DNA of 64,000 nt from Phyllobates terribilis. Its lineage: Eukaryota. Numbering within the stretch: position 1 is the stretch's first letter; each line of letters begins with the position of its first letter. The stretch covers positions 244,094,001 through 244,158,000 of the forward strand of contig NW_027362773.1 in NCBI RefSeq assembly GCF_046119375.1. The letters run 5' to 3'. Of this stretch, positions 10,272 to 34,319 are shown in pieces. The position numbers and the translations under genes were made by a program. The notes under the pieces are model-generated. The model ran no database searches and was not told where the DNA came from. It was given only the letters and a program-made list of their open reading frames with translations.

Positions 10272-10615
10272 TTAAAATCTTAAATTTGTGCAACCGAGCT
10301 CCAACAAACACACAAATGACCCACTGAAATTGAGGGAAGTATTGCATATGGCGGCCAAACAATGAAAAGAAGTACGCCTGCAATACTGGTGTGTGCAAAC
10401 CATCCTAGATACAGATCCAGGCCAGGACGCACAGACGCGACACTCCGGATGTCCAGTCCCTGTACAATGATCGCGTCTCCTCTTGGGTGACTGATCCAAA
10501 GTTCAATTCACTTTGACTTAGGAGATTCGTCGTTCCTTCATAAATAACCATCTCCAAAAGAGAGAACGTATTGCAGGAAGAGGCTGAGATCAAGCTTAGG
10601 TCGTGGCAGGAGATC

Positions 10616-13600
10616 TCACTGGACGTGGGGTCGCGGCTTTAGAATCAACTTGCCCGTCTGCAAAAGAAATAGCACAATAGTGAAGGTGGGGGGGGGGACA
10701 GGACGATAAATATTCCCCCCCCATAGTATAGAAATTAAAGATTCAACAGGCGCAACAAGCCTCTACCCCAAAGGGGTAATCCAGTTATTACAGAGTAGGC
10801 GATAACTACTAGCTCAACTGGGGGGGGGATCCTATCACCAGAACACACACTGTTGGCCAGTCCCCGTCTGAAGTAGCATGCCCGTGGGCTACCACCCCTT
10901 GCCATATGACTTAGGATAAAAGCTAAACCAGAATCTCAATTTGCAGACATGTTTCGGGGTATTGGCCCTCCTCATTGCAAAGCAGGAGATCTATTTTGGT
11001 TTATTCTAAGTCAAAGTTTGTTAAAGAGTCAATATTCACTTTTAGGATTGCTACCTCCAATAGGTGTCGCTAGAGTTTATGTCCTCTTCCTGTCTGAAGA
11101 GACAATATGCATGTGTGTGGCTGTAAGACAACTATCTACAGCAGAAGCCTCCCCACCACTGCTCTGTCTGCAGTAGGACAAAATATTACAAGCCCCGTCC
11201 AATGGTCACTGGGGTGATGCTTAAGTCAGCCCCCACTGTACATAACTGACTGCAGAAGGAGTTAACCGTGAATCCGTCAGTAAGCTCAGTCTGAAGGCTG
11301 GGTCTGTAACTTCCTTTGATCTATCACATAAGCTAATTTATGACCACATCAAAGTTCACCTTTCATGTGCTCATAAGTCAGTTTAGCAGAAAGTACAGAA
11401 GATCCTGCCCCCCGTTGTCAGAACAAGTTCATTGACCAATTTAATTTTAAAGGGAACATGTCAAAAATTTTTACACACCCAAACCATTTATATATACATT
11501 TGGGTGTGACGCTATATCGCCTTCCTAGCAGCACTCGCCGGTGCCTGATTGACAGGTCAGTGTTCGTGTACCAGAGCAAACTACCTGTCAATCAGCCAGG
11601 GGAGGAAACACAGCGTGAGGATGAGGAGCTGGAAGTGCGTCGTCACTCCCCAATGCAATTCCAGGCCACTTCCAAAGTGATTTCTTGCTGTGGGGAGCAG
11701 CACTAAAGGGTCATAAAGGGATTGAATGGCTTATCTTTTAAAGGGCTACACAGTCATATAAATTATTTGGAAGGGGGCATTAAAGTTTTTGACAGATTCT
11801 TTTTAAAAGGTTGTCCACTACTGGATAACACTTTTTAATAGCCCCAGAGTGGATCAGAAATTAAAAAAAAAAAGTATACTCCTAAGCTCTCAGCCCCGTG
11901 TCCCCTGCCAATCTTGTGACCAGAGGGGCACACCTAGCAATAATTGGAGGAGCAGTGCTGGTCCTGGAGGCAAGTATTCATATTTTTTAATTTATACATC
12001 ACTTGGGGGTGACTAATATAAATGGAAAATTTAGTTAACCTCGATTTAGAAACGCTTTGGAAATAAAGTATAATACGTACATCGTCACATGACATGTTGT
12101 ATTCTGCTAGTACAGTCCGACATCGTGCTGCTATTCTGAAGATTTGGTTAAGAAAGTGAGCGAGTTGCAAGTTGAATTAAACTGAGACCAAGTTACAGAT
12201 TCCTGCGCATGGATCTCATCTGCAGCTACATAAGTTCTTGCTCCACATAGCTGCACGGAAGAGTACTGGTAGTCTGGGTGAGAATGAGGTCCTTACTTTT
12301 CTTAGACATCCTTTTCCAAGCTGGCACAGGCAGACTAAACTTCCGCCCCCCTCCATACACGATAGACTAATGTTGGTGGAACCCGCCAATATCAACAGGT
12401 TCGACTGACACTATACTGTGTATGGGGGCGATGGCCAGCTGATGGTTGGGGAAGATGTCCAATTTTTGACTAGAGATCACTTTTAATTCCCAGAGATAAG
12501 CCGCCAGCTGAGCTTTAAGTCAGAGAACGCAGGGGCGCTGGGTCGAACATGTGCTCCTGTGTATGGGAGGCATTATACAGTGATGGCATATGTTAGTGAC
12601 ACCCATTTACATACTACATTTTGTCTTTCCTACAGTTTAGTGTGATCATCAAATGCAAGAAGCAAACTAGTACCGTGAAAGACCATTAAAAGGATACATC
12701 GACGGGGCCACCACCCGCTTGTGTATACCGGCGAAGAACAGACCTATTAGTGTTATACAGCTAATTGTAAAGAAGGGATGATTCCATAATGACGTGAAGA
12801 ATGAAACCTGGAAAAGAAGAAGAACAGATCAGTACCTTCAGATTGATTTTTGCCATCAAGAACATTTCTCTAATATCCAGTGATGGAGGGTGCCCAGAAA
12901 TCATACATCCCATGAGTGTACTTAGTGGAAAACCCCTTTAAGGAATAAGAATCACCTTTTGCGTCTCAGGATCTATAAGCCAGTTCCAGGCCCCGGTTGC
13001 AGTACAAACGGATACTACGATGAGAATCACTATTGGAAGAAGAGAGAGAGGGCAGATTATAGGAAAGCTGTCACTACTTATCCATTACACCGGTTTCACA
13101 TGTCCTTCACAGACCAAGCATGGAATGAAGTGTCTGGATCGGCTCCGGGTCTCCTAACCTGAAGTCAACAACTTCCTATACACCTATCTGACCTGACCAC
13201 AGCAGTCTCATCTGTTGCCAGTCCGGCCATGGCAGTTTGTAGACAGATACTCAGATTGTGACTGTCCAATGTATATACGCAGTCTTAGGATTAGCATGCT
13301 CACTACTCGAGATTTACGAGCATGCTCGGGTGTTTTCCGAGTATCTTCAGTGTACTCGGGTGTTATGTTTGAGTCACTCCGTGTGCATGATTTACGACTG
13401 TTTGACAGCTTTAATACATGTGAGGAATGCCTGTTTGTTAGGCATTCCTGACATGTATTAAAGCTGTCAAACAGTTGCAAATCATGCACACGGAGTGACT
13501 CAAACATAACAATCGAGCACGCCAAAGATACTCGATGAGCATGCTCGCCGAAAGGGTTAATAGAACACGCTTGCTCATCACTACTTAGGATATTACATGT

Positions 13601-16600
13601 GCAGCTCAGTCGCAGACGGACACTGACTGATGTGCTTAGCAATGCTTGCAGTATATAACCATGCCAAAAAAGGTCTGCTAAGTATTAGTGATCAGCATTT
13701 GGTACTAGTGTAAATCTCTAATTGTTACGATACTGGCGTAGTACTGCTGGAAACCAGTGGCCGAAGGAGTACAAGCAGGAACAGCAAGCGGTAGTAGAAG
13801 TTCTTGGAGATAGCAAGGAGTTGTAGAAAACAATCCATAGATAGGTGAGAACAGTCTGGGTAAGAATGTTCAGGAGCTGGAGACTGAAGCTAAGCTAACA
13901 ACAAGACACAATACTCAAGCAATGAGTGAGAGATCCATGCGGTTTTGAGATGGATTCCATAGATTCAGAATCTGCCATCTTAGTAAAGGGCAATTGTAGA
14001 ACACAACAGCAGCCTCCAGCGGTAAGGAGTGAACCTGCAGCACAATTATTAAAGTGAACAATATTGGCCACTAGTGGTCAAACTGTAGAAGGCAATAGAA
14101 TTCCTAAGAATAATGCACCTGTATAAAAAAAAAAAATGTGTTCTCATTTTTCCTTAAAAGGTTATTCCCAAAAAATAAGACCAGTCATGGTCTATAGGAC
14201 TTGCTGACTTGTCCCATAGACAATGAATGGAGTGGAGGTTGAGCATGTGCACCTCTTCTTTATTCAAAACCCTGATCTCAGTATCGCTGGCGGTCCCAGC
14301 AATCAGCAAGCTATCCTGTGGATAGGAAACAGTCCCCCAAAAACAAGTCATAACCCTTTCAAATAAAAAAATCTGCTTGTTTAAATGCAAACAATAAAGA
14401 ATGCAGAATGAGGTGTATAATGAGTTAGATTAGGGGCTGACTTTACAAGGAATTTTAACAGGATCTGAAAATTGTGTTGTGTGTATTTATCTGCATATTT
14501 CTATTGCACCGAATCTCCTCAAAGAAGCATCGTCATCCTCCTTGTTACTTACTTCTCCAACGTCCGGTTGCAGGTTGTAAACATGAAACATATTCTGTGA
14601 GCCTTCGCTCAAAAGCCTTTAGATCTAGACGGAAGAACAGATCTGTAAGAACATAAGCACCAAACAGTCTACTGTGAGCAATGGGCGCTATTAATACTGG
14701 ATAAAGACAACAGGGGGAAACTTTTTGCATCCAATCAGATCCAGTACCACTGCAGTCAATCACTGGGCTCAATGGCTCATGCAGTCTACACTGGTCATGT
14801 GACGTCACTGCTGCAGCCTGCAAATAATCAAAAGGAGCAGCAGTGGAGAGGCGGTGCTGGAGCAGGGTTTGCGAAGTAGAGCTCTAATTGTTATTTTTAA
14901 CCCTTCCGAAACTTGTGGGGGTAAAAAAGTTTAGTCCTAGAAAACCCATTTAATACCATACATATACAGCAGATAGGCACACTGTGTGGAGCAGGCACAG
15001 GAGCTGAGCCCGCACCATACAGTGCAGGAGACGGCAGTACAACTGAGAGTAACTAGCTACAGTAGCTCCCACCAATTCCATCAGTTTAACCTTTTAAATG
15101 CCATAACGGGGTAATTTAAAGGCTTCAACATGGAGGCTGTCAGTTCCAGTGGCCGTGTGCGCACCGATGAGATGATATAACAGGCAGGGGCCTGCTAGTT
15201 CCTGCCGTGTTAGAACGGCTATGACGTCACCCTTCATAGATCATCAATTTCACAACACACCACAGGTTCTAATCCCATAAGAGGACTAAAAAAAAAAGCA
15301 AAGCAAGCAGTATATACTTATGGATTTAATTTTAGATTTCCACATGCGTAACTGCCCAGACTAATAAAATATGGGAAACAACAAAGAAAATGCCAGAATT
15401 GCTGTTTTCCAGCTACAGCATGTCCCCTAAACAGAAAGGCGATCAAAAAAGCTGCACGTTCCCCAAAACGTTATCATTAAAGGGATATTCCCATCTCCAA
15501 GATCCTATCCCAATATGTAGTAGGTGTAATAATAATAATCTTAGCAAATACCTACAATTAGAAATGTAGTATAGTATTTCTGATTCGCTATGTCTCTTTC
15601 CTCATGTGCAGGCATTGCAGGAGCTTAGGTATTCACGGTTACGACCACTGATAAAGTGACAGTTAGCTAGCTGCTAGTGGTCGTAACCGTGGATACCTAA
15701 GGTTCTGAATTGTCTGCACACGAGGTAAGTGACATAGCGAATCAAAAATACCATACTACATTTCTAATTGGAGATATTTGCTAATATTATTATTACACCT
15801 ACTACGTATTGGGATAGGATCTTAGAGATGGGAATACACCTTTAAATACTACAACTCAGTGAAAATTAAACCAGCCCTTACAGGAAAAAAATAAAATAAA
15901 GTTAGGAGTCTCAGTATTTTATTGCACAATAAAAAAAATCCCCAAAATATTGCTTTTTATTTAATCATTTCACCTCACTTGGAATTGTTAATTTCCTGTC
16001 TCTCGGTACATTATATGATAACATGAATGGTGGCATGTCCGCAATCATTTATGCTGATGGAATAATAAAAAAAAAGGAAACATGGCTCTTGTACGAAGAG
16101 GAGGAAAATAATGAAAAATTGGCAGAAAAATTATCCAATGGAAGGGGCTAGCGTGCAGCATGGTGTCTAATGGACGCACAGTCTATGATGGACGCACGGT
16201 GTCTGGCGGATGCACGGTCTATGATGGACCCACGGTGTCTGGCGGATGCACGGTCTATGATGGACGCACGGTCTCTGGCAGACGCTCGGTCTATGATGGA
16301 CGCACGGTGTCGGCATGGTGTCTGGCAGACGCTCGGTCTATGATGGCCCCACGGTCTATGACGGATGCACGGTGTCTGGCAGACGCTCGGTCTATGATGG
16401 ACGCACGGTGTCTGCATGGTGTCTGGCGGACGCTCGGTCTATGATGGACACACGGTGTCTGGCGGATGCTCGGTCTATGATGGATGCACGGTGTCTGGCG
16501 GACGCTCGGTCTATGATGGATGCACGGTGTCTGGCGGACGCTCGGTCTATGATGGACGCACGGTGTCTGCATGGTGTCTGGCAGACGCTCGGTCTATGAT

Positions 16601-17303
16601 GGCCCCACGGTCTATGACGGATGCACGGTGTCTGGCAGACGCTCGGTCTATGATGGACGCACGGTGTCTGCATGGTGTCTGGCGGACGCTCGGTCTATGA
16701 TGGACACACGGTGTCTGGCGGATGCTCGGTCTATGATGGATGCACGGTGTCTGGCGGACGCTCGGTCTATGATGGATGCACGGTGTCTGGCAGACGCTCG
16801 GTCTATGATGGATGCACGGTGTCTGGCGGACGCTCGGTCTATGATGGACACACGGTGTCTGGCGGATGCTCGGTCTATGATGGATGCACAGTGTCTGGCG
16901 GACGCTCGGTCTATGATGGACGCACGGTGTCTGCATGGTGTCTGGCGGACGCACGGTCTATGATGGACCCACGGTCTCTGGCGGACGCTCGGTCTATGAT
17001 GGATGCACGGTGTCTGGCGGACGCATGGTGTCTGCGCGGACGCCCTATACCTAGTGTATTCTATAGATTTAGCACACTCTCACAGTGACACATTGTCTTT
17101 GCAGGCGTTTTAATAATATGCAAATCAAGCAGAAAAGTCAAAGAAATGTAAATGAGCAGTAACCCACCCCGAGGTTCCACTGCTCTAGGTCTCCATGGTA
17201 ACACTCACACGTGCAGTGCCCCCTGTGTGCACTACATATATATGCCCCCAGTCTCCCTGCACCCCGCTACTGCCGCACCTTCTGCCTGCTCCAGGGAATT
17301 CAT
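10616..17303 (-). CDS. CNEP1R1: CTD nuclear envelope phosphatase 1 regulatory subunit 1 (TMEM188), 6 coding exons, 125 aa
   Basis: Exons (minus): 17303-17279, 14624-14553, 13029-12956, 12807-12698, 12135-12081, 10657-10616. All introns are GT-AG, phases are consistent and the total is 378 nt. Translation [125 protein letters not shown] matches the vertebrate protein as recalled. Confidence 0.98.
12136..12697 (-). other. CNEP1R1: U12-type (minor spliceosome) GT-AG intron 4 of CNEP1R1
   Basis: The donor is GTATCCTTT. The branch site TTTCTTAAC lies ~11 nt upstream of the acceptor (..TTTCTTAACCAAATCTTCAG), and there is no polypyrimidine tract. Confidence 0.9.
13290..13584. mobile_element. hAT-like foldback MITE in CNEP1R1 intron 2
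   Basis: Near-perfect ~65-bp stem (13362-13510) and a right end GCTCATCACTA. The left end is degenerate. Confidence 0.65.
15481..15841. mobile_element. T2/Kolobok-type MITE, whole-element palindrome
   Basis: TTAA-AGGGATATTCCCATCTC...GAGATGGGAATACACCT-TTAA. The arms pair over ~165 bp. Confidence 0.9.
16170..17040. repeat. 36-bp minisatellite (two related 18-mers) with a 256-bp higher-order duplication
   Basis: Unit GGTCTATGATGGACGCAC+GGTGTCTGGCGGACGCTC. Variant blocks recur at +256 bp (16315/16571, 16416/16672). Confidence 0.95.
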
Positions 17304-17309
17304 GTCTGC

Positions 17310-17610
17310 CTCACTTCCTGTATTCTTGCCCTTTCAGAAAACCTTCATGTAACCGCCTCAGTGATTGGTCTACTCTCACAAGCCCATTCATCTGATTGGC
17401 TGCGGTTGCCCCGCCCAGCTATAGCCTCCCGTACGTGGTATCGTGATGACGTCATACGCTCGCTGCCTTTAGTCAAACGTGAAGAACGTACGTCGCGCCT
17501 GTGATTGGACAAGGTGGCTGCCAGTTTTACTCGGAGGAAACTCGTGATTGGCTGGAATGTATGGAGGCGGGACATCGTGCAGGAAAGGAGGACGGCATTG
17601 CTGATGGTCA
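17310..17610. promoter_or_regulatory. Bidirectional CpG-island promoter (CNEP1R1 minus / TIPRL plus)
   Basis: CpG-rich. It contains four ATTGG (inverted CCAAT) boxes at 17364, 17395, 17504 and 17547, a GC box at 17409-17416, a full CRE TGACGTCA at 17447-17454 and an ETS-like TCACTTCC at 17311. A plus-strand donor candidate ATG|GTCAGT lies at 17607. Confidence 0.8.
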
Positions 17611-20045
17611 GTATGGAGATGGTTGTGCCAGGCCGTAACTGGGGGCGCCGGGAAAATGTCTGCATAGCGCCTGCGGGGTGTGCGTGCATACGGTTCATAC
17701 GCGCCTGTGTACACACTGCGCTTGTAAAGCCGCAGCATGTGTGCGACATCGTTGGTCTCTGATAGTATAATGTCCCAGTGTCTGCCTGTTTCTCTCTCTG
17801 TCCAGCAGAGTCTCCTGTACTATGTTATACTCTGCCTCCACTCATTTAAAGTGACAGGCCCCCATATTGGTGCATTGGGTGTGACCCCTGAAAGGGATAT
17901 CCAAAAAGTGATTAAGGCAGGAGCTTTGGTGCAAGCCATCACATTCCACCTGTGTGACTGCCCCCACCAATCAGTGGAGAGCTTCTAGCCGGACCCCACT
18001 GCTCTCATATCATTGGCTTATATACAAGGGGGCTTTCTTTTTAATCACTATTTGGTGCTAAGCATTATTATTATTATTATTTTTCGATTGGGTTTCATTA
18101 GAAATATTGCACCGTTTGCTTTCTATAGCCTTTATTACTATTACTGGCTGCAGAATGAGTTAACTGAGAGTCAGTCAGTAAGCTTGATGTGGCGGGAGAG
18201 TTTCTGACCCTTAGACCTCATTCATACATTGTGTTTTTTTTTAACATACGAGAAAAACGAACAGTTTCAAAAATGATTTTTGGTCTGAGTGTTGTCAGTT
18301 TTTACATGAAAAGGAAAAAATAAACAGTTCATGATAATCGGACCTCACTCAGATGCCATCCGAGTGCTGTCCGATGTTTTTCACGGACTTATAGACTTGC
18401 ATTGCCAATCCTGAGCTGTCACTCCGATCAAATGGGACATGTCTCCTGGATTTTGCATGGACCGCTCTGTGCGTGGAAAATCATGGACATATGAATGATA
18501 TCATTGGTGAAACCTGTGTGGCTGCAAAGGGGCCCAGGAAGTAATGGGGCCACTACTACCTCCAAATCAGGTGGCCTCCTGTCTGTGTCCGCAGTGCCCC
18601 ATAGACTATTATAGGGATGAGGGCTATTCCTGAAAAACTGGGATAGCACTCGTATGCAAAAAGCGACGTCTGAATGAGGCCTAATCCATCTTATCTGGGC
18701 TCCTCAGAGCTAATTTATGTCTCCAAACCATATTCCATTAGAATGTGCAGGAATCAAAGAGCTGAGAAAAGTCAAACGGGCAACATTTATAATGAAACCA
18801 AATAGCAAACCTGATTTTTAGCCACAAATACAGACATTTAATGTCCCCAAAGCTGCTGGTCAACCCCATTAAAAATACCAGACACTGCTTGTAGACAAGA
18901 ATGGAGGTATGGAGATAAATCTACAAGATGAGAACAACCATATAAAGATGCTCAGAAGGGTCGTCAGTCCCCAGAACAGGTTACATATGGTGGATATGCT
19001 GCTGATTGTTCCTCCAGATTTGCAGATCTCATCCATACGCTGCGAGTGAATAAAAGTCACATGGAAATTGACTTGTAAGAATTTAAAATCTGCAACATCT
19101 CAGTTCTTTTAAAATGAATAGAGTGAAAGCTGCCCACGACATCCGCCGCGGCGGGCCCCACGACATCCAACTGTTGTGTGAACATATGTTATTCCCATGT
19201 TCGTAGGATCTAGGTATTGTCGGATAGTTCTTGTAAGTACAAGCACCTTTGCAATTTATTTCTTATTAAAAATTTGTAGCCCTAATTGAGAGAATAACAC
19301 AACTAAGCTTGTTGCTTGGGCGAATGACCACTGCTGCTAGTCAGCAGAACATGCGCAGTACTTACAAGCTCTTCTCTGTAGAGACTAAGCGCTGTCCGGA
19401 TCACTGGAGCGCACTGGTATCTCCTAATCCCAGCACTAAACAGCCGGGGTGGTCGGTCTCCTTGGCAATTAGATGTAAACAAAAGAAAAGTGTTAATATA
19501 TCCAGAACGGCTGCACCTTTTAATCAGCAGTAAATTGAAAAAGTGCTTGTCTTTATAAGCTCTATCCATCAATGAATGTGGTCTATATATGTTTTTATTT
19601 TCCTCCCACTTACTGTACAGGTTAGTTTCTGTCGGACCACTCTGGGCCTGTTCCACCAGAATCTGTCCATCTATGGAAATCCATGTTTTAGAAAAGCATC
19701 TGAAGAATATTGCACATGTCATTGTTTCTAGAGGAAGGAGCCACTCTGCATACAGGTTGTAGGGTTGTGGTTTAGGCTTGGCACTGATCACTTCCACATT
19801 GAGGTGAATGGTGCCGATGATGTTGCTTCTATGCAGGACTACCGGGACATGGCAGATGAACAGGACACTAATACGAGACCTGCTGATGGTGCCTGTGTCC
19901 TGGCTGGTATGTCTACACGGGACATCATCAGCACCGCTCACCTGCAGATGTGGAAACCTTTCTGATCTTCTCGGTGCATTGTCCTACTGCACTTCTCCTA
20001 ACAGTACCTTTTTTCTCTGTCTCCAGACCCTGACCGGCTCCAGCC

Positions 20046-20870
20046 ATGATGATTCACGGATTCAAAAGTAGCAATCAAGACTTTAGTTTTGGACCATGGA
20101 AGGTCACGGCCATCAAAACGCACATTATGAAATCGGCCGATGTGGAGAAACTGGCCGAAGAAATGAACATGCCCTGTCTTCCTGAAATGATGTTTGGGGA
20201 CAATGTCTTAAGGATCCAGCACTCCTCCGGCTTCGGGATTGAGTTCACGGCTAAGGATGGACTGAGAAGGGTGAATAAGAACAAGGGAATGGTCAAAGTA
20301 GCTTGTGCTGAGGAATGGCAGGAAAGCAGGTCAGAGAGCGAGCACAGCAAGGAAATCGTGAAGCCCTATGACTGGACTTACACCACTGATTACAAGGGAA
20401 CCTTACTGGGCCACGACCTGACATTTAATACCGTTCCTACCACCGAACGAATTAATACGGAAAAACTGAAGACAAGGGAGCAGATCATGTTTTTCGAGGA
20501 AGTGCTGCTGTTTGAAGACGAACTCCATGACCATGGGGTGTCCAGCCTGAGCGTGAAGATCAGAGTCATGCCTTCCAGCTTTTTTCTTCTCCTCAGGTTC
20601 TTCCTCAGAGTGGACGGCGTCCTTATCCGAATGAACGACACTCGTCTATACCACGAGTCTGACAAGACGTTCATGCTGAGAGAATACACGTCGCGGGAAA
20701 GTAAAATCAGCAATCTAAGTCATGTCCCCCCGCCACTCTACACCGAGCCGAACGAAATCTCTCAGTACTTGCCCATTACAGAAACCGTTTACGAAAAGTT
20801 AGAATTTCCAACGTTGACACAGACAGAATTAGGTGACTCTGCCGGTCCGGTAAGCCAAGTGGCACCATGA
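20046..20870 (+). CDS. TIPRL: TOR signaling pathway regulator-like (TIP41 homolog), intronless CDS, probable retrogene
   Basis: Uninterrupted 274-aa ORF with TIP41 motifs ([54 protein letters not shown]) and Kozak context CAGCCATG. A branch/polypyrimidine/CAG acceptor sits at 20026, and AATAAA at 21456. Confidence 0.97.
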
Positions 20871-21535
20871 GGTGGTCTTCAGTGGAAGATACAAACGTAG
20901 CAATCTGGAAACTAACCATCGGCGTGCCGCGAACAGTCGTCCGGCACGTTGACGACTGTTGACCATATGCAAGCTGCACAGCGCGCCCTTGCTACATATT
21001 TTGTGTAGGTGTACAACGCTACCCTTGTAGAATACCACCGCGGTAACGTTGGCGTGTGCTACATCTGTATGCGATCACAATCATTCACTGTGAATATTCT
21101 CGCCCCACACAACATTACCACTTAATAATTTGTGAAATACTTGGGTTTCCCCAACACGAGATGCCTTAGTTTGTCTCTCTGTATTTTCGTGAGCCGTCCA
21201 CTCATGAAGGAAATACTCCGTGGGTTTGCTGATCCATTACATTATAGACTCCAAGCCGATTATATAAGGGGCCTCAGAAAACCGTGTGATGCCAACTGAG
21301 CGGTGGGATCATCTGCGTGCTCGTTATTACATTTCTGCTGACTTGCACTCAGGAGCCAAGTCCCCCCCCCCCCACCCCAAAATCCATCGACAGCTCACTC
21401 CGAACCATTAGAAAGTATTGACACATAACCCCTCTAGAGTTCATAAAGATAATTTAATAAAAAAATGTAGAAAATTAACGCTATTTTTGGTTTGTCTTTA
21501 ATATTCATCATGTCTGATCTTGTAGGTTTTTGGTA

Positions 21536-22965
21536 CAGTAGTGTTCAAAATAATAGCCGTATATGACTAACCAGATTACTCTCTGTCTTTAGTATATCAC
21601 GTTAGTATATCACCACATGTCAAACAACTTACCAGTTGGTGCAGTAGATTCTAAGAAAACCAACATGTTTTTGAGTCTGTGTATTTGAATAATTAATTGT
21701 ACGGGGATGTGTCCAAAATAATAGCAGGCGGGAGTTCAATTAGTGAGGTCAATCATTCTGTGAAGAAACAGGTGTGAATCAGGTGGCCCTTAGTTAAGGG
21801 TGAAGCCAGCACATGTTGTACATGCATTTCTCCTTGAAAGCCTGAGAAATGTAGGTCGTTCAAGACATTGTTCAGAAGAACAGCGTACTTTGATTAAAAA
21901 ATTGATTGGAGAGGGTAAAACTTATAAAGAAGTGCAGACAATGATAGGCTGTTCAGCTAAAATGATCTCCAATGCTTTAAAATGGAAAGCAAAACCAGAG
22001 AGACGTGGAAGAAAACTGAAAGACTACCATTCGAATGGATCGAAGAATAGCCAGAATGGCAAAGGCTCAGCCAATGATCAGCTCCAGGATTATCAAAGAC
22101 AATCTCAAGTTACCTGTGAGTACTGTGACAGTTAGAAGACGCCTGTGTGAAGCTAATCTCTTAGCAAGAAGTCCCCACAAAGTCCCACTGTTAAAAAAAA
22201 AAAAAAAAAAGATGTACTGAAGAGGATACAATTTGCAAAAGAACACATCAACTGGCCTAGCGAGAAATGGAGAAACATTTTGTGGACTGATGAAAGTAAA
22301 ATTGTTCTTTTTGGGTTCAAGGCCTCAGACAGTTCGTCAGACGACCCCCCAAACTCTGCATTCAAGCCACAGTACACTGAAGACAGGGAAGCATGGTGGT
22401 GCAAGCCTCATGAAATGGGCATGTTTCTCTTACTATGGTGCCAGACCTATTTACCGCATACAAGGGATCATGGACCATTTTGCATATATTAAAATATATA
22501 AATATTTTGTTGAAGACACACTGCAAATGTGTCTTCACTAAAATGCTGCCGGATAGCGCACTATGCGCATGCGTTGATTCCGACGCCGCAGTCCTCCCCC
22601 GGCTTCCGGCCCAAACAGAGGCGCCGCAGCAACAGTCCTCTCGGTCAGGTTTGTGCTTATGGCACCGGAGATCGCGGTATGCGTTCAGTGCCTACGCATA
22701 CCGTGATCTCCGGCGCCACACTCCTCTTACCTGTAACGGCTGGATGTGTTCTTCTGTCTGGGGCCTGAGAACTTCAGACAGACGGACACATCTACCGTTA
22801 TATTATAGATACTTGAAGAGGTCATGTTGCCTTACGCTGAAGAGGACATGCCCTTGAAATGGATGTTTCAACCAGACAACGACCCTAAACACACCAGTAA
22901 ATTAGCAAAATCTTGGTTGCAGTCCAACAAAATTGAGATTATGGAGTGGCCAGCCCAATCCCCAG
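21536..22965 (+). mobile_element. Tc1 transposon relic, interrupted and 3'-truncated
   Basis: TA-CAGTAGTGTTCAAAATAATAGC TIR. Fragments [35 protein letters not shown] and FQPDNDPKH..EWPAQSP. Confidence 0.9.
22495..22809 (-). mobile_element. Possible non-autonomous Helitron-like insertion inside the Tc1
   Basis: Minus strand starts TCTATAATATAAC, inserted at an A|T site with no TSD. A hairpin TGAAGACAC-N9-GTGTCTTCA lies near the 3' end. The canonical CTRR end is absent. Confidence 0.4.
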
Positions 22966-23159
22966 GCCAGGGTGTCAATCAGAGCAGGAGGCAGGTATCG
23001 GCCGGGTCCTAAAGTAAGACAGATTTAAGAAGGCGTCTGCTACGCCAAACGAAGAGATCTTCTGCAGCCATCTGCAGAGCGACTGTCTGTTACATCTGAC
23101 ACACCCGTGACAGACATGGAGTCTTCTGACACCTGCAAATAGATATTCAAGCTGTTTCA

Positions 23160-23760
23160 TGGTGCCTGGTATGCGATAAATGGGCCCAACTCCATAGTAT
23201 GAGAAATATCCCTAAACCATTTTGCTTGCACTTCCATGTTTTACAGTTTTCACAGTGTACTGTGACTTGAATTCAGTGTTATGGGTCATCTCACAAACTG
23301 CGACCTTTAGACCCAATCAGAACAATCTTACTCTCATCTGTCCATATAATTTTGCACCACTTCTCTTTAGGCCAGTCAATGTGTTCTTTGGCAAACTGTA
23401 ACCCAACGTGTCTTTTTTTCAGCAATGGTAATTTTTTAGGGTTTATTGCAAATAGTTTGGCTTCACGTAGGTGTCTTCTGATGGTTGCAGGACTCACAGG
23501 TAACTGAAGATCTTTGATCTTCCTGGAGCTGATCAATGGATGCTTCTTTGCCATTCTTGTGATTCTATGATCTATGTGGATGGTAGTATTAATTTTCCTA
23601 CCACGTGTTTTGGGTTTTGTTTGCTATTTTAAAGCATTGGAAATTTATTAAGCTGAGGAGACAATTATTTTTTGCACTTCGTTACATGTTTTCCACTCTC
23701 CAACTAACTTATTGATCAAAGTTCTTTCTTCTTCAGTACAATGTCTGGAACGACCCATTT
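23160..23760 (-). mobile_element. Tc1 fragment related to 21536-22965, opposite orientation
   Basis: [48 protein letters not shown]. Confidence 0.85.
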
Positions 23761-24648
23761 AGAGCAGTGCCTGGTTTTCTCCACACATACCGCTTAAATT
23801 TATAACCAAAAAGTTCTATCTTCGTCTCATCAGACCAGAGAATCTTATTTCTTATAGTCTGGGAGTCTGTGTATGGGATCTGCTCTCCATACAAAAGGAG
23901 GAATCGTCGTGTAGCGGTCTTCCTATACAAACCTGTATTATGAGCAATGAAACCAGAAGATTTTTTTTCCGCTTATCGAATATGATTACAATAAAATCCA
24001 GACATTTCTCATACTGTTTTTGAGCAAACTTTATGCGGGCTTTCATATGTCTTGCACTGAGGAGAGGCTTCCGTCGGGCCACTCTGTCATAAAAGCCCAA
24101 CTGGTGGAGGGCTGCAGTGATAGTTGACTTTGTGGAACTTTCTCCCATCTCCCTACTGCATCTCTGGAGCTCAGCCACAGTGATCTTGGGGTTCTTCTTT
24201 ACCTCTTTCCCAGACTCTTCTCCCACGATTGCTCAGTTTGGCTGGATGGCCAGGTCTAGGAAGACTTCTGGTGGTCCCAAACTTCTTCCATTTAAGGATT
24301 ATGGAGGCCACTGTGCTCTTAGGAACCTTGAGTAATGCAGAAATTCTTTTGTAACCTTGGCCAGATCTGTGCCTTGCCACAATTCTGTCTCTGAGCTCCT
24401 TGGGCAGTTCCTTTGAGCTCATGATTCTCATTTGGTCTGACATGCATTGTGAGCTGTGAGGTCTTATATAGACAAGTGTGTGCCTTTCCAAATCAAGTCC
24501 TATCAGTTTAATTAAACACAGCTGGACTCCAAAGAAGGATTAGAACCATCTCAAGGAGGATCACAAGGAAATGGACAGCATGTGACTTAAATTTGAGTGT
24601 CTGAGCAAAGGGTCTGAATACTTATGACCATGTGATATTTCAGTTTCT

Positions 24649-24650
<2 letters not shown>
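23761..24650 (-). mobile_element. Tc1 fragment, Passport/Eagle-like
   Basis: MSSKELPKELRDRIVARHRSGQGYKRIS..KVPKSTVASIILKWKKFGTT, KNPKITVAELQR and DSQTIRNKILWSDETKIELFG. About 150 bp of foreign sequence is inserted near 23870-24018. Confidence 0.88.

Positions 24651-24700
<50 letters not shown>
24650..24700. repeat. (TA)n microsatellite, target site of the next Tc1
   Basis: Read directly from the sequence. Confidence 0.95.
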
Positions 24701-24703
<3 letters not shown>

Positions 24704-26198
24704 TGCTCAAAAAATAAAGGGAACACTCAAATAACACATCCTAGATCTGAATGAATGAAATATTCTCATTAAATACTTTGTTCTGTACAAAGTTGAATGT
24801 GCTGACAACAAAATCACACAAAAATCATCAATGGAAATCAAATGTATTAACCAATGGAGGCCTGGATTTAGAGTCACCCCCAAAATTAAAGAGGAAAAAC
24901 ACACTACAGGCTGATCCAACTTTGATGTAATGTCCTTAAAACAAGTCAAAATGAGGCTCAGTATTGTGTGTGCCCTCCATGTGCCTGTATGACCTCCCTA
25001 CAACGCCTGGGCATGCTCCTGGACAGTCTGTGGTGCAACATGACGTTGGTGGATAGAGCGAGACATGATGTCCCAGATGTGCTCAATCGGATTCAGGTCT
25101 GGGGAACGGGCGGGCCAGTCCATAGTTTCAATGCTTTCATCTTGCAGGAACTGCTGACACACTCCAGCCACATGAGATCTGGCATTGTCCTGCATTAGGA
25201 GGAACCCAGGGCCAACTGCACCAGTATATGGTCTCACAAGGGGTTTGAGGATCTCATCTCGGTACCTAATGGCAGTCAGGCTACCTCTGGCGAGCACATG
25301 GAGGGCTGTGCGGCCCTCCAAAGAAATGCCACCCCACACCATTACTGACCCACTGCCAAACCGGTCATGTTGAAGGATGTTGCAGACAGCAGATCGCTCT
25401 CCACGGCGTCTCCAGACTCTGTCACGTCTGTCACATGTGCTCAGTGTGAACCTGCTTTCAGATGTGAAGAGCACAGGGTGCCAGTGGCGACTTTGCCAAT
25501 CCTGGTGTTCTGTGGCCAATGCCAAGCGTCCTGCACGGTGTTGGGCTGTGAGCACAACCCCCATCTGTGGACGTCGGGCCCTCATACCACCCTCATGGAG
25601 TCGGTTTCTAACCGTTTGTGCAGACATGCACGTTTGTAGCCTGCTGGAGGTCGTTTTGCAGGGCTCTGGCACTGCTCCTCCTGTTCCTCCTTGCACAAAG
25701 GAGGAGGTAACGGTCCTGCTGCTGGGTTGTTGCCCTCCTATGGTCCCTCCACATCTCCTGGTATCTTCTCCATGCTCTGGACACTGTGCTGACAGACACA
25801 GCTACCCTTCTTGCCACAGCTCACACTGATGTGCCATCCTGGATGAGCTGCACCACCTGAGTAACTTCTGTGGGTTGTACTGTAGACACCCCCTCAGTCT
25901 ACTGTATGTCTAGGGGTGAGAGCAATGGCAAAATGAAAAAGTGACCAAAACAACAGCCAAAAAGGATGAGAACAGAGAAGTGGTCTGGTCACCACCTGCA
26001 GAACCACTCCTTTATAGGGGGTATCTTGCTAATTGTCTATCATTTCTACCAGTTGTCTGTTCCATTTGCACAACAGCAGGAGAAATTGATTCACAATCAG
26101 TGTTTCTTCATAACTGGACAGGTAGATTTCACAGAAGTGTGATTGACTTGGAGTTACATTGTGTTGTTTAAGTGTTCCCTTTATTTTTTTGAGCAGTG
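24701..26198 (-). mobile_element. Complete Tc1 (DD34E) element with short TIRs, mutated transposase
   Basis: TA-CACTGCTCAAAAAATAAAGGGAACACT...AGTGTTCCCTTTATTTTTTTGAGCAGTG-TA. The 232-aa ORF has FTSESRF (first D lost), MQDNARSH and [13 protein letters not shown]. The N-terminus is frameshifted. Confidence 0.95.
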
Positions 26199-32540: not shown

Positions 32541-34142
32541 TATTATAGACCAAAAGTTTGGACACACCTTCTCATTTAAAGATTTTTCTATATTTTCATG
32601 ACTTTGAAAATTGTACATTCACACTGAAGGCATCAAAGCTATGAATTAACACATGTGGAATTATATACTTAACAAAAAAGTGTGAAACAACTGAAAATAT
32701 GTCTTATATTCTAGGTTCTTCAAAGTAGCCACCTTTTGCTTTGATGACTGCTTTGCACGCTCTTGGCATTCTCTTGATGAGCTTCAAGAGGTAGTCACCG
32801 GAAATGGTTTTCACTTCACAGGTGTGCCCTGTCAGGTTTAATAAGTGGGATTTCTTGCCTTATAAGTGGGGTTGGGACCATCAGTTGTGTTGTGCAGAAG
32901 TCTTGTGGATACACAGCTGATAGTCCTACTGAATAGACTGTTAGAATTTGTATTATGGCAAGAAAAAAGCAGCTAAGTAAAGAAAAACGAGTGCCCATCA
33001 TTACTTTAAGAAATGAAGGTCAGTCAGTCCAAAAAATTGGGCAAGCTTTGAAAGTGTCCCCAAGTGCAGTTGCAAAACCCATCAAGCGCTACAAAGAAAC
33101 TGGCTCACATGAGGACCGCCCCAGGAAAGGAAGACCAAGAGTCACATCTGCTTCTGAGGATAAGTTTATCCGAGTCACCAGCCTCAGAAATCGCAGGTTA
33201 ACAGCAGCTCAGACTAGAGACCAGGTCAATGCCACACAGAGTTCTAGCAGCAGACACATCTCTTCAACAACTGTTAAGAGGAGACTTTGTGCAGCAGGCC
33301 TTCATGGTAAAATAGCTGCTAGGAAACCACTGCTAAGGACAGGCAACAAGCAGAAGAGACTTGTTTGGGCTAAAGAACACAAGGAATGGACATTAGACCA
33401 GTGGAAATCTGTGCTTTGGTCTGATGAGTCCAAATTTGAGATCTCTGGTTCCAACCACCGTGTCTTTGTGCGACGCAGAAAACGGATGGACTCTACATGC
33501 CTGGTTCCCACTGTGAAGCATGGAGGAGGAGGTGTGGTGGTGTGGGGGTGCTTTGCTGGTGACACTGTTGGGGATTTATTCAAAATTGAAGGCATACTGA
33601 ACCAGCATGGCTACCACAGCATCTTGCAGCGGCATGCTATTCCATCCGGTTTGCGTTTAGTTGGACCATCATTTATTTTTCAACAGAAAAATGACCCCAA
33701 ACACACCTCCAGGCTGTGTAAGGGCTATTTGACCAAGAAGGAGAGTGATGGGGTGCTACGCCAGATGACCTGGCCTCCACAGTCACCAGACCTGAACCCA
33801 ATCAAGATGGTTTGGGGTGAGCTGGACCGCAGAGTGAAGGCAAAAGGGCCAACAAGTGCTAAGCATCTCTGGCAACTCCTTCAAGATTGTTGGAAGACCA
33901 TTTCCGGTGACTACCTCTTGAAGCTCATCAAGAGAATACCAAGAGCGTGCAAAGCAGTCATCAAAGCAAAAGGTGGCTACTTTGAAGAACCTAGAATATA
34001 AGACATATTTTCAGTTGTTTCACACTTTTTTGTTAAGTATATAATTCCACATGTGTTAATTCATAGTTTTGATGCCTTCAGTGTGAATGTACAATTTTCA
34101 AAGTCATGAAAATACAGAAAAATCTTTAAATGAGAAGGTGTG
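32541..34142 (+). mobile_element. Tc1-like transposon with DD38E (Intruder-type) spacing; right TIR runs into the N gap
   Basis: TIR ..AGACCAAAAGTTTGGACACACC inserted in a (TA)n tract. The internal inverted repeats at ~32550-32720 and ~33990-34142 match. Confidence 0.92.
32955..34001 (+). CDS. Full-length 348-aa Tc1-like transposase, predicted catalytically dead
   Basis: The frame is open, with paired-like HTH, GRPR and WSDESKF. The second D and the E are both Lys (FQQKNDPKH; PDLNPIKMVW), with 38 residues between these positions. Confidence 0.9.
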   Translation: MARKKQLSKEKRVPIITLRNEGQSVQKIGQALKVSPSAVAKPIKRYKETGSHEDRPRKGRPRVTSASEDKFIRVTSLRNRRLTAAQTRDQVNATQSSSSRHISSTTVKRRLCAAGLHGKIAARKPLLRTGNKQKRLVWAKEHKEWTLDQWKSVLWSDESKFEISGSNHRVFVRRRKRMDSTCLVPTVKHGGGGVVVWGCFAGDTVGDLFKIEGILNQHGYHSILQRHAIPSGLRLVGPSFIFQQKNDPKHTSRLCKGYLTKKESDGVLRQMTWPPQSPDLNPIKMVWGELDRRVKAKGPTSAKHLWQLLQDCWKTISGDYLLKLIKRIPRACKAVIKAKGGYFEEPRI

Positions 34143-34284
34143 NNNNNNNNNNNNNNNNNNNNNNNNNNNNNNNNNNNNNNNNNNNNNNNNNNNNNNNNNN
34201 NNNNNNNNNNNNNNNNNNNNNNNNNNNNNNNNNNNNNNNNNNNNNNNNNNNNNNNNNNNNNNNNNNNNNNNNNNNNNNNNNNNN
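34143..34284. other. Assembly gap (N run)
   Basis: Run of n bases. Confidence 1.
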
Positions 34285-34319
34285 NCAGTTTTCAACAAAA
34301 ACATACTAAATAACATTTG

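What the first reader, a model, noticed from the sequence alone, without database searches (positions are those of the whole stretch)
17279..21461. Intronless TIPRL retrogene apparently driven by the CNEP1R1 promoter through a 5'-UTR intron
Mammalian TIPRL is multi-exon, but here the whole 274-aa CDS is one uninterrupted, intact exon. It has a strong acceptor 20 nt upstream of the ATG (20026), its own AATAAA (21456), and no visible poly(A) tail or TSD, which suggests an old, retained copy. The only promoter-like sequence upstream is the CCAAT/CRE/GC-box island shared with CNEP1R1, with a donor candidate at 17607. This matches the known route by which retrocopies become functional. It places a PP2A/PP4/PP6 regulator and the CTDNEP1 regulator head-to-head under one promoter. 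Whether the parental multi-exon TIPRL survives in this lineage (or this copy replaced it) cannot be seen here.
Basis: partly seen in the sequence, partly recalled or inferred. Interest (0 to 1): 0.85.

Follow-up and report, generated by a model that had tools for sequence, protein, structure and literature searches.

The report
Frog TIPRL: old expressed replacement retrogene

Summary

- **Coding sequence:** 20046-20870(+) is an intact 274-aa TIP41/TIPRL ORF (Pfam E 2.7e-68; human TIPRL structure 5W0W E 1.7e-138).
- **Transcript:** RNA-derived contigs from three of four runs splice 17606|20027 (GT..AG). They run through the CDS to a poly(A) tail at 21478, after the AATAAA at 21456. Their 5' ends are at 17563 and 17581.
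- **Neighbour:** cnep1r1 exon 1 (ATG at 17303, minus strand) lies at most about 256 bp away. The gap holds four TGATTGG (CCAAT) boxes, one CRE and a small CpG island.
- **Age:** the arrangement is old, not lineage-specific.
  - An intronless CDS head-to-head with cnep1r1 occurs in Mixophyes, Bufo, Lithobates, Xenopus tropicalis and Ascaphus.
  - The four frogs with DNA in hand share a 13-nt donor block and an acceptor 17-19 nt before the ATG.
  - Two salamanders also have an intronless CDS; their locus was not seen.
- **Ancestral state:** caecilian, chicken and lungfish keep a multi-exon gene. In the first two it sits beside a GPR161-like gene.
- **Selection:** dN/dS is about 0.05.
- **Parent gene:** only one TIPRL protein appears per frog or salamander, so the parent seems lost. 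This is inferred, not shown.

This is a new example of a known kind, an orphan retrogene using a neighbour's bidirectional promoter. Earlier notes of this scan list similar candidates elsewhere in this genome.

The parts
10604..17307 (-). cnep1r1 (CTDNEP1 regulatory subunit). Six coding exons at about 17303-17279, 14629-14550, 13040-12955, 12810-12700, 12140-12075 and 10660-10604.
   Evidence: tblastx against the Mixophyes cnep1r1 locus finds all exon blocks, from MNSLEQAE to [10 protein letters not shown]. RNA contigs splice 17279 to the [10 protein letters not shown] exon. The orthologous neighbour carries Pfam PF09771 in other frogs.
17308..17562 (.). Bidirectional promoter core between the two genes. 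It has TGATTGG (inverted CCAAT / Y-box) motifs at 17364, 17395, 17504 and 17547, a CRE TGACGTCA at 17447-17454, CCGCCC at 17411, and a small CpG island.
   Evidence: Motif positions come, and CpG o/e of 0.87-1.07. The boxes align between the window, Mixophyes and Ascaphus. All four frogs have 4-6 ATTGG boxes. Contig 5' ends lie on both sides.
17563..17606 (+). tiprl exon 1, non-coding, at least 44 nt. Its last three bases (17604-17606) are an upstream ATG.
   Evidence: RNA contig 5' ends at 17563 (X15) and 17581 (X1, X2) are preceded directly by Illumina adapter letters. The spliced mRNA gives a 15-codon out-of-frame uORF that overlaps the main ATG.
17607..20026 (+). 5'-UTR intron, 2420 nt, GT..AG.
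   Evidence: The joint 'skips 2420, GT..AG (cut +1)' appears in contigs of X1, X2 and X15. The donor block ATG|GTCAGTATGG is present in four frogs, 298-426 nt from the cnep1r1 ATG. The acceptor is 17-19 nt before the ATG in four frogs.
20027..21478 (+). tiprl exon 2: 19 nt of 5' UTR, the whole CDS and a 608-nt 3' UTR.
   Evidence: Single contigs of 1498-1758 nt cover 20026-21478 with no differing letters in X1 and X2.
20046..20870 (+). TIPRL / TIP41-like coding sequence, 274 aa plus stop, uninterrupted.
   Evidence: Pairwise dN/dS against other frogs is 0.046-0.054.
21456..21478 (+). Polyadenylation signal AATAAA (21456-21461) and cleavage/poly(A) site (about 21476-21478).
   Evidence: The sequence is. 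A loose end of 20 A follows 21478 in X1, and the X1, X2 and X16 contigs end at 21474-21478.

Best explanation
This is the working tiprl gene of a hyloid frog, and it descends from a retrocopy of the TIPRL mRNA. The copy landed head-to-head a few kb upstream of cnep1r1, on the stem of frogs and most likely of frogs plus salamanders. It is transcribed from the cnep1r1 CpG-island, CCAAT-box (NF-Y type) bidirectional promoter. A short non-coding exon 1 (at least 17563-17606) is spliced over a 2.4-kb intron to an acceptor 19 nt before the start codon. Exon 2 carries the entire CDS and 3' UTR and ends at its own AATAAA. The original multi-exon gene, next to GPR161 and SFT2D2, is still present in caecilians, amniotes and lungfish. 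It appears to have been lost in frogs and salamanders, so the retrogene now supplies the conserved TIPRL function (binding PP2A-family catalytic subunits) under strong purifying selection. What is shown: ORF identity, splicing, poly(A) site, head-to-head layout, conservation of layout and splice signals across frogs, the multi-exon state and different locus in outgroups, and low dN/dS. What is inferred: retroposition as the mechanism, NF-Y dependence and real co-regulation of the two genes, loss of the parent, and a single event shared with salamanders.
For: The RNA joint 17606|20027, the adapter-marked 5' ends at 17563 and 17581, the poly(A) tail at 21478, and exon word depth of 124-367 against 0-7 over most of the intron come. 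The cnep1r1 exon 1 and its splice are supported. An intronless CDS beside a PF09771 gene on the opposite strand is seen in Mixophyes, Bufo gargarizans, Lithobates pipiens, Xenopus tropicalis and Ascaphus. Ambystoma and Pleurodeles (23) also have an intronless CDS. Outgroups are multi-exon at another locus: Rhinatrema spans 19,983 bp between 7tm_1 and T-box genes, chicken spans 7,392 bp in 7 coding exons between 7tm_1 and Got1/SFT2D2-like genes, and lungfish spans 358 kb. The promoter boxes align in three frogs. The donor 13-mer and the acceptor are conserved in the four frogs with DNA (21, 36, 41). dN/dS is about 0.05. The gene tree follows the species tree, with the window inside Hyloidea and no excess stem length for the intronless lineages. 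Each frog and salamander gives one TIPRL protein among the top 120 hits. The published frame is orphan retrogenes, and the finding that 11% of expressed mammalian retrocopies use an upstream gene's bidirectional promoter (PMC5470649).
Against: No poly(A) remnant or target-site duplication survives, so retroposition rests only on total intron absence plus the change of locus. Parent loss rests on annotated protein sets, not on a search of frog or salamander genomes. For the salamanders no gene was called within 10 kb and no DNA was returned, so a shared locus, and hence a single event, is unproven. The protein tree does not recover frogs plus salamanders; it weakly groups caecilians with frogs at 88/35 support. 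Contig 5' ends are not mapped transcription starts. Contig depth is much higher for tiprl (124-367) than for cnep1r1 (about 10-31), so the two genes are not expressed equally, although depth is a poor measure. No transcription-factor binding was tested.
Confidence: 0.85

Rival explanations
1. A young, lineage-specific retrocopy sits next to cnep1r1, while the multi-exon parent still does the work elsewhere in this genome.
For: Only 64 kb of this genome was visible, so the parental locus could not be inspected. Amphibian genomes hold many recent retrocopies (bioRxiv 10.64898/2026.06.26.734816).
Against: The same intronless gene with the same neighbour and splice signals occurs in five other frog families, including Ascaphus. 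The window protein nests within Hyloidea as an ordinary ortholog. dN/dS is about 0.05. It is highly expressed. No second TIPRL protein appears for any frog.
Confidence: 0.03
2. There were two independent retropositions, one in the frog stem beside cnep1r1 and one in the salamander stem elsewhere, each followed by loss of the parent.
For: The salamander locus was not seen; no gene was called within 10 kb. The protein tree does not unite frogs and salamanders. Other notes of this scan suggest that replacement by retrogenes recurs in frogs.
Against: It needs two retropositions, two fixations and two parent losses of the same gene, against one of each. Salamander genomes are so expanded that a 2.4-kb frog intron scaled up would easily put cnep1r1 beyond 10 kb, so the empty flanks are expected under a single origin too.
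Confidence: 0.2
3. No retroposition occurred. The gene moved by DNA rearrangement and lost all six introns afterwards, for example by gene conversion with cDNA. Alternatively, the intronless state is ancestral and the introns were gained elsewhere.
For: No poly(A) tract or target-site duplication is left to prove an RNA intermediate.
Against: Simultaneous absence of all six introns together with a new chromosomal neighbourhood is the standard signature of retroposition. The neighbours GPR161-like and SFT2D2-like did not move with it. Only about 19 nt of sequence lies between the acceptor and the ATG. Lungfish, chicken and caecilian are all multi-exon, which rules out an intronless ancestor.
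Confidence: 0.04

Closest known systems
'Orphan' retrogenes, i.e. retrocopies that replaced their parental gene (Ciomborowska et al. 2013, PMC3548309; reviewed in PMC5470649)
   Same: It is an intact intronless copy at a new locus and under strong purifying selection. The multi-exon parent is present only in outgroup lineages. It is the only family member seen in annotated protein sets of the carrier lineages.
   Different: The described sets are for human and mammals. This case concerns TIPRL in frogs and probably salamanders, and I found no paper reporting it. Parent loss here is inferred from annotation, not from a genome search.
Retrocopies transcribed from the bidirectional promoter of an upstream head-to-head gene, with a newly acquired 5'-UTR exon and intron (Carelli et al. 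2016, as summarised in PMC5470649, fig. 3D)
   Same: It is head-to-head with cnep1r1, with the transcript ends at most about 256 bp apart. The promoter is a CpG-island, CCAAT-box type. It has a non-coding first exon and a 5'-UTR intron whose acceptor lies just before the retroposed sequence.
   Different: The splice signals and promoter boxes are conserved across crown frogs, which is far older than most described mammalian cases. Promoter sharing is inferred from transcript ends and conservation, not from reporter assays.
Vertebrate TIPRL (human TIPRL, PDB 5W0W / 5D9G), the TIP41-like regulator of PP2A-family phosphatases
   Same: Pfam TIP41 covers residues 48-224. The match to the human chain is near-identical over residues 10-256. 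It is 79-82% identical to mammalian proteins.
   Different: Gene structure and locus differ: one coding exon beside cnep1r1, instead of seven coding exons beside GPR161 and SFT2D2.

Membership tests
TIP41/TIPRL protein family | Significant match to the TIP41 domain model over its full length | tested here: met
   PF04176 at E 2.7e-68, 229 bits (cut-off 25), profile positions 1-173 of 174.
TIP41/TIPRL protein family | Orthology to vertebrate TIPRL with a solved structure | tested here: met
   Matches 5w0w_B at E 1.7e-138 over residues 10-256. The protein tree places it among frog TIPRL proteins.
TIP41/TIPRL protein family | Binds PP2A, PP4 and PP6 catalytic subunits | not testable with these tools
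   Inferred only from the very high conservation with human TIPRL.
Retrogene (processed, RNA-derived gene copy) | Lacks all introns of the parental coding sequence | tested here: met
   Chicken TIPRL maps as 7 coding blocks with 6 introns. The window ORF is continuous across all of them.
Retrogene (processed, RNA-derived gene copy) | Lies at a locus different from the parental gene | tested here: met
   The parent lies between 7tm_1 (GPR161-like) and Got1/SFT2D2-like or T-box genes in chicken and a caecilian. The frog gene lies beside cnep1r1.
Retrogene (processed, RNA-derived gene copy) | Poly(A) tract remnant and target-site duplications | tested here: not met
   None is visible after the 3' UTR or around the gene. 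This is expected for an insertion that predates crown frogs, so it does not count against the reading.
Orphan (replacement) retrogene | Parental multi-exon gene absent from the carrier genome | tested here: inconclusive
   There is one TIPRL protein per frog or salamander species among the best 120 hits, in single-member clusters for Bufo and Ambystoma. No genome-wide tBLASTn was possible, and the GPR161-SFT2D2 interval of frogs was not inspected.
Orphan (replacement) retrogene | Parent retained in outgroups; retrogene under purifying selection | tested here: met
   Multi-exon in caecilian, chicken and lungfish. dN/dS is 0.046-0.054.
Bidirectional-promoter gene pair | Head-to-head genes with transcript starts less than 1 kb apart | tested here: met
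   The cnep1r1 contig 5' end is at 17307 and the tiprl contig 5' ends are at 17563 and 17581. These are contig ends, not mapped transcription start sites.
Bidirectional-promoter gene pair | CpG island and CCAAT (NF-Y) enrichment, no TATA dependence, conserved arrangement | tested here: met
   Four TGATTGG boxes and CpG o/e of about 0.9-1.07. The boxes are conserved in other frogs. Factor binding was not tested.

The most novel reading that the evidence does not exclude
A single retroposition of TIPRL beside cnep1r1 on the common stem of frogs and salamanders, followed by loss of the multi-exon parent, would be a rare genomic change. It would mark Batrachia (frogs plus salamanders, excluding caecilians). 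It would also be one of the oldest documented cases of an essential housekeeping regulator running entirely on a neighbour's promoter. A conserved upstream ATG at the very end of the acquired exon 1 adds a possible layer of translational control.
Probability: 0.55. Interest if true: 0.55.

Novelty: new member of a known kind. Interest (0 to 1): 0.45.

Why it matters
This is a clean, RNA-verified example of how a retrocopy becomes a lasting gene. It inserted head-to-head next to a CpG-island, CCAAT-box promoter, gained a tiny non-coding first exon and a 5'-UTR intron, and then took over from its parent.

The arrangement has been kept since before crown frogs diverged, so the promoter, donor and acceptor can be read as constrained elements. 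Standard retrocopy pipelines need a parent gene in the same genome, so they miss such replacements. That may be why this one is annotated simply as tiprl.

If salamanders share the locus, the event is a discrete character supporting frogs plus salamanders as a clade. Xenopus tiprl and cnep1r1 share one promoter region of roughly 300-430 bp, so knock-outs or promoter edits of one gene may disturb the other.

Tried and rejected
- **A recent, lineage-specific retrocopy:** rejected after the gene-structure look-ups in other frogs.
- **Intronless as the ancestral state:** rejected by caecilian, chicken and lungfish.
- **A second TIPRL-like piece in the window:** tblastn found only chance matches with E above 2.
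- **Look-ups that returned nothing:** Xenopus laevis P0015 and Latimeria P0029 had no gene on record.
- **Salamander neighbourhood:** the look-ups gave gene ranges but no DNA and no neighbour within 10 kb.
- **Searching for CNEP1R1 proteins:** this would have compared salamander chromosomes or locus tags with those of TIPRL. I left it out because the 125-aa protein is split over six exons and has no single reference, and long sequences are not to be typed.
- **Earlier notes of this scan near this place, or with the gene names:** nothing found.
- **Literature searches:** TIPRL + retrogene, orphan retrogene + Xenopus, tiprl + Xenopus, and retrogene + amphibian found no report of this case.
- **The 212-aa minus-strand ORF inside the intron (19303-19941):** no Pfam match, and the RNA contigs skip this region, so I treat it as chance or a decayed repeat.
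- **dS for the deepest frog pairs:** saturated, giving NaN. Only three pairwise dN/dS values are usable.
Full report
**1. What is in the sequence**

The window holds an uninterrupted 274-codon ORF at 20046-20870 on the + strand. It matches Pfam TIP41 (PF04176) over the whole model at E 2.7e-68. It matches the solved human TIPRL chain 5w0w_B at E 1.7e-138 over residues 10-256.

- an AG at 20025-20026 behind a pyrimidine tract, 19 nt before the ATG;
- a GT at 17607-17608;
- AATAAA at 21456-21461.

Upstream, the stretch 17360-17560 holds four TGATTGG motifs (inverted CCAAT / Y-box) at 17364, 17395, 17504 and 17547. It also holds a full CRE, TGACGTCA, at 17447 and a CCGCCC at 17411. Four CCAAT/ATTGG motifs in 200 nt is the highest density anywhere in the 64-kb window, whose mean is 2.05 per kb. 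CpG observed/expected is 0.87-1.07 there, against 0.51 for the window as a whole.

**2. Expression and splicing**

Public runs of the same organism hold 0.89-0.92 of the sampled words of this stretch. I laid four of them on 17100-21800.

- **Joint:** three runs (X1, X2, X15) have a contig that joins 17605/6 to 20026/7. The skipped 2420 nt begin with GT and end with AG, which is exactly the predicted junction.
- **Exon 2:** the same contigs run without differing letters through the whole CDS to 21478. In X1 they continue with 20 A, so the poly(A) site lies about 17 nt after the AATAAA.
- **5' ends:** the contigs begin at 17563 (X15) or 17581 (X1, X2) and are preceded directly by Illumina adapter letters. 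Exon 1 is therefore at least 44 nt long.
- **Depth:** word depth is 124-367 on exon 2 and 0-7 over most of the intron. These are transcripts, not genomic DNA.

On the other strand, contigs in X2 and X16 cover cnep1r1 exon 1. The ATG is at 17303-17301, encoding MNSLEQAE. In X2 the exon ends at 17279, with GT at 17278-17277, and is joined to sequence encoding [11 protein letters not shown] tblastx comparison with the Mixophyes locus finds all six cnep1r1 coding exons on the minus strand between 17303 and 10604. The cnep1r1 contig reaches 17307. The two transcripts therefore start at most about 256 bp apart, head-to-head, with two Y-boxes on each side of the central CRE.

**3. How old it is and where it came from**

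The protein is 88-92% identical to hyloid and myobatrachoid frog TIPRL and about 83-86% identical to ranoid, pelobatoid and pipid proteins. It is 81-82% identical to salamander and 79-84% to caecilian proteins. In a maximum-likelihood tree it nests inside Hyloidea, and the tree follows frog phylogeny.

Gene-structure look-ups give the following picture.

| Species | Group | TIPRL CDS range | Neighbours |
|---|---|---|---|
| Mixophyes fleayi | frog | 825 bp, intronless | 125-aa PF09771 (cnep1r1), opposite strand upstream |
| Bufo gargarizans | frog | 825 bp, intronless | PF09771 gene (144 aa as called), opposite strand upstream |
| Lithobates pipiens | frog | 825 bp, intronless | 125-aa PF09771 gene, opposite strand upstream |
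| Xenopus tropicalis | frog | 822 bp, intronless | PF09771 gene (128 aa as called), opposite strand upstream |
| Ascaphus truei | frog | main ORF undivided | PF09771 gene upstream; the annotated isoform adds a short 5' exon |
| Ambystoma mexicanum | salamander | 831 bp, intronless | no gene called within 10 kb |
| Pleurodeles waltl | salamander | 831 bp, intronless | no gene called within 10 kb |
| Rhinatrema bivittatum | caecilian | 19,983 bp, multi-exon | 516-aa 7tm_1 gene and a T-box gene |
| Chicken | bird | 7,392 bp, seven coding blocks | 525-aa 7tm_1 gene and a Got1-family (SFT2D2-like) gene |
| Protopterus annectens | lungfish | 358 kb, multi-exon | none called |

From general knowledge, the chicken and caecilian neighbourhood is the GPR161-TIPRL-SFT2D2-TBX19 region of human 1q24. 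The ancestral state is therefore a multi-exon gene beside GPR161. The derived state is an intronless gene beside cnep1r1. All six introns are absent and the locus has changed, which is the signature of retroposition. No poly(A) remnant or target-site duplication survives, as expected at this age.

**4. Conservation of the acquired parts**

In the four frogs for which DNA was returned, the acceptor AG lies 19 nt before the ATG (window, Mixophyes, Ascaphus) or 17 nt before it (X. tropicalis). The donor lies in a 13-nt block, ATG|GTCAGTATGG. The block is identical in the window (17604), Mixophyes (L001:7367) and Ascaphus (L002:9283), and has one change in X. tropicalis (L003:8041). In each case it is 298-426 nt from the cnep1r1 ATG.

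The Y-boxes align between the window, Mixophyes and Ascaphus, and every frog has 4-6 ATTGG boxes in the interval. The promoter, non-coding exon 1, intron and acceptor were therefore already in place in the last common ancestor of living frogs.

**5. Selection**

Nei-Gojobori dN/dS is 0.046 (window vs Mixophyes), 0.054 (window vs Ascaphus) and 0.051 (Mixophyes vs X. tropicalis). dS is saturated for the other pairs. Stem branch lengths are 0.15 for frogs, 0.22 for salamanders and 0.14 for caecilians. They show no obvious burst tied to the intronless state.

**6. Is the parent gone?**

I could not search frog genomes. In the protein search each frog and salamander species contributes a single TIPRL entry among the best 120 hits, with one-member clusters for Bufo and Ambystoma. 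Every entry I looked up is the intronless gene. A surviving multi-exon paralogue in these annotated genomes should have been listed. Replacement is therefore the likely reading, but it is inferred.

**7. Mechanism proposed**

Transcription starts in both directions from one small CpG island whose dominant motif is the Y-box. From general knowledge, this motif is bound by NF-Y and is typical of bidirectional promoters.

The tiprl transcript gains a 5'-UTR intron. From general knowledge, such introns usually help the expression and export of otherwise intronless retrogene mRNAs. The protein is then the ordinary TIPRL.

Exon 1 ends with an ATG (17604-17606) in a weak context. After splicing this ATG opens a 15-codon out-of-frame uORF that overlaps the main start codon. 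The same ATG is part of the conserved donor block in all four frogs and is out of frame in each. This may damp translation. It may equally be a by-product of donor conservation.

**8. Comparison with what is known**

Orphan retrogenes that replaced their parents are described for human: 25 in PMC3548309 and 10 in Carelli et al. 2016, as cited in PMC5470649. About 11% of expressed mammalian retrocopies use the bidirectional promoter of an upstream head-to-head gene (PMC5470649). This case fits both patterns.

The gene is already annotated as tiprl / 'TIP41-like protein' in many frog genomes. I found no paper describing its retrogene origin. Other first-stage notes on this same genome list further intact intronless candidates: UHRF1, LZTFL1, PPIL1 and CEP43. 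I did not check them. They suggest the phenomenon recurs in frogs.

**9. Verdict**

The gene is the ordinary, ancient tiprl of frogs rather than a peculiarity of this lineage. It is a new member of a known kind.

Its main added value would come from showing that salamanders share the locus, which would make it a marker for frogs plus salamanders, and from demonstrating parent loss. Neither could be done here.

Noticed in passing
window 17604-17606, with L001:7367, L003:8041 and L002:9283: The last three bases of tiprl exon 1 are an ATG inside the conserved donor block. After splicing it opens a short out-of-frame uORF (15 codons in the window) that overlaps the main start codon. The ATG is out of frame in all four frogs.
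   Followed up: partly
window 16158-17029: A GC-rich minisatellite lies in cnep1r1 intron 1, just downstream of exon 1. Its base period is 36 nt (about 21 copies), with a higher-order 256-nt unit at 92% match. It produces the many spurious repeat ORFs on both strands.
   Followed up: partly
window 17168-17307: In run X16 a 1472-nt contig carries cnep1r1 exon 1 extended by 111 nt to 17168, then joins the same exon 2 sequence. The boundary has no GT donor. It may be a non-canonical or alternative splice or an assembly artefact. X2 shows the canonical junction at 17279.
   Followed up: no
window 21361 and 21373: Runs X15 and X16 (a different study) differ from the window in the tiprl 3' UTR: one extra C in the C-run and C>G at 21373. 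X1 and X2 match the window. This is probably polymorphism between individuals.
   Followed up: no
window 21600-25700, 32955-36831 and 42318-44882: The 40 kb downstream of tiprl is rich in transposons. It has Tc1/mariner transposase pieces (24998-25696 and a full 348-aa ORF at 32955-34001). It has a possible hAT-like element (34544-36831, with only a weak DUF659 hit). It also has a LINE with endonuclease and reverse-transcriptase ORFs (43455-44882 and 42318-43412). RNA contig depth rises above 1000 from about 21650, at a repeat.
   Followed up: partly
L002:10001-10044 (Ascaphus): The annotated 289-aa isoform X1 starts in a short exon inside a local repeat, about 700 nt downstream of the conserved donor block at L002:9283. 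The conserved block suggests that the main exon 1 of Ascaphus tiprl is the one shared with other frogs.
   Followed up: no
proteins P0024 and P0028 (Gracilinanus agilis): This marsupial has two distinct TIP41-like proteins on different large contigs, so TIPRL may also have been duplicated or retrocopied in marsupials.
   Followed up: no
L004:78-7706 and 10001 (chicken); caecilian look-up: The parental multi-exon TIPRL is itself head-to-head with the GPR161-like gene, about 2 kb apart in both chicken and caecilian. The gene therefore exchanged one head-to-head partner for another.
   Followed up: no
window 34143-34285: A run of 143 N, either an assembly gap or masked, inside the transposon-rich region. 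It was left as it is.
   Followed up: no
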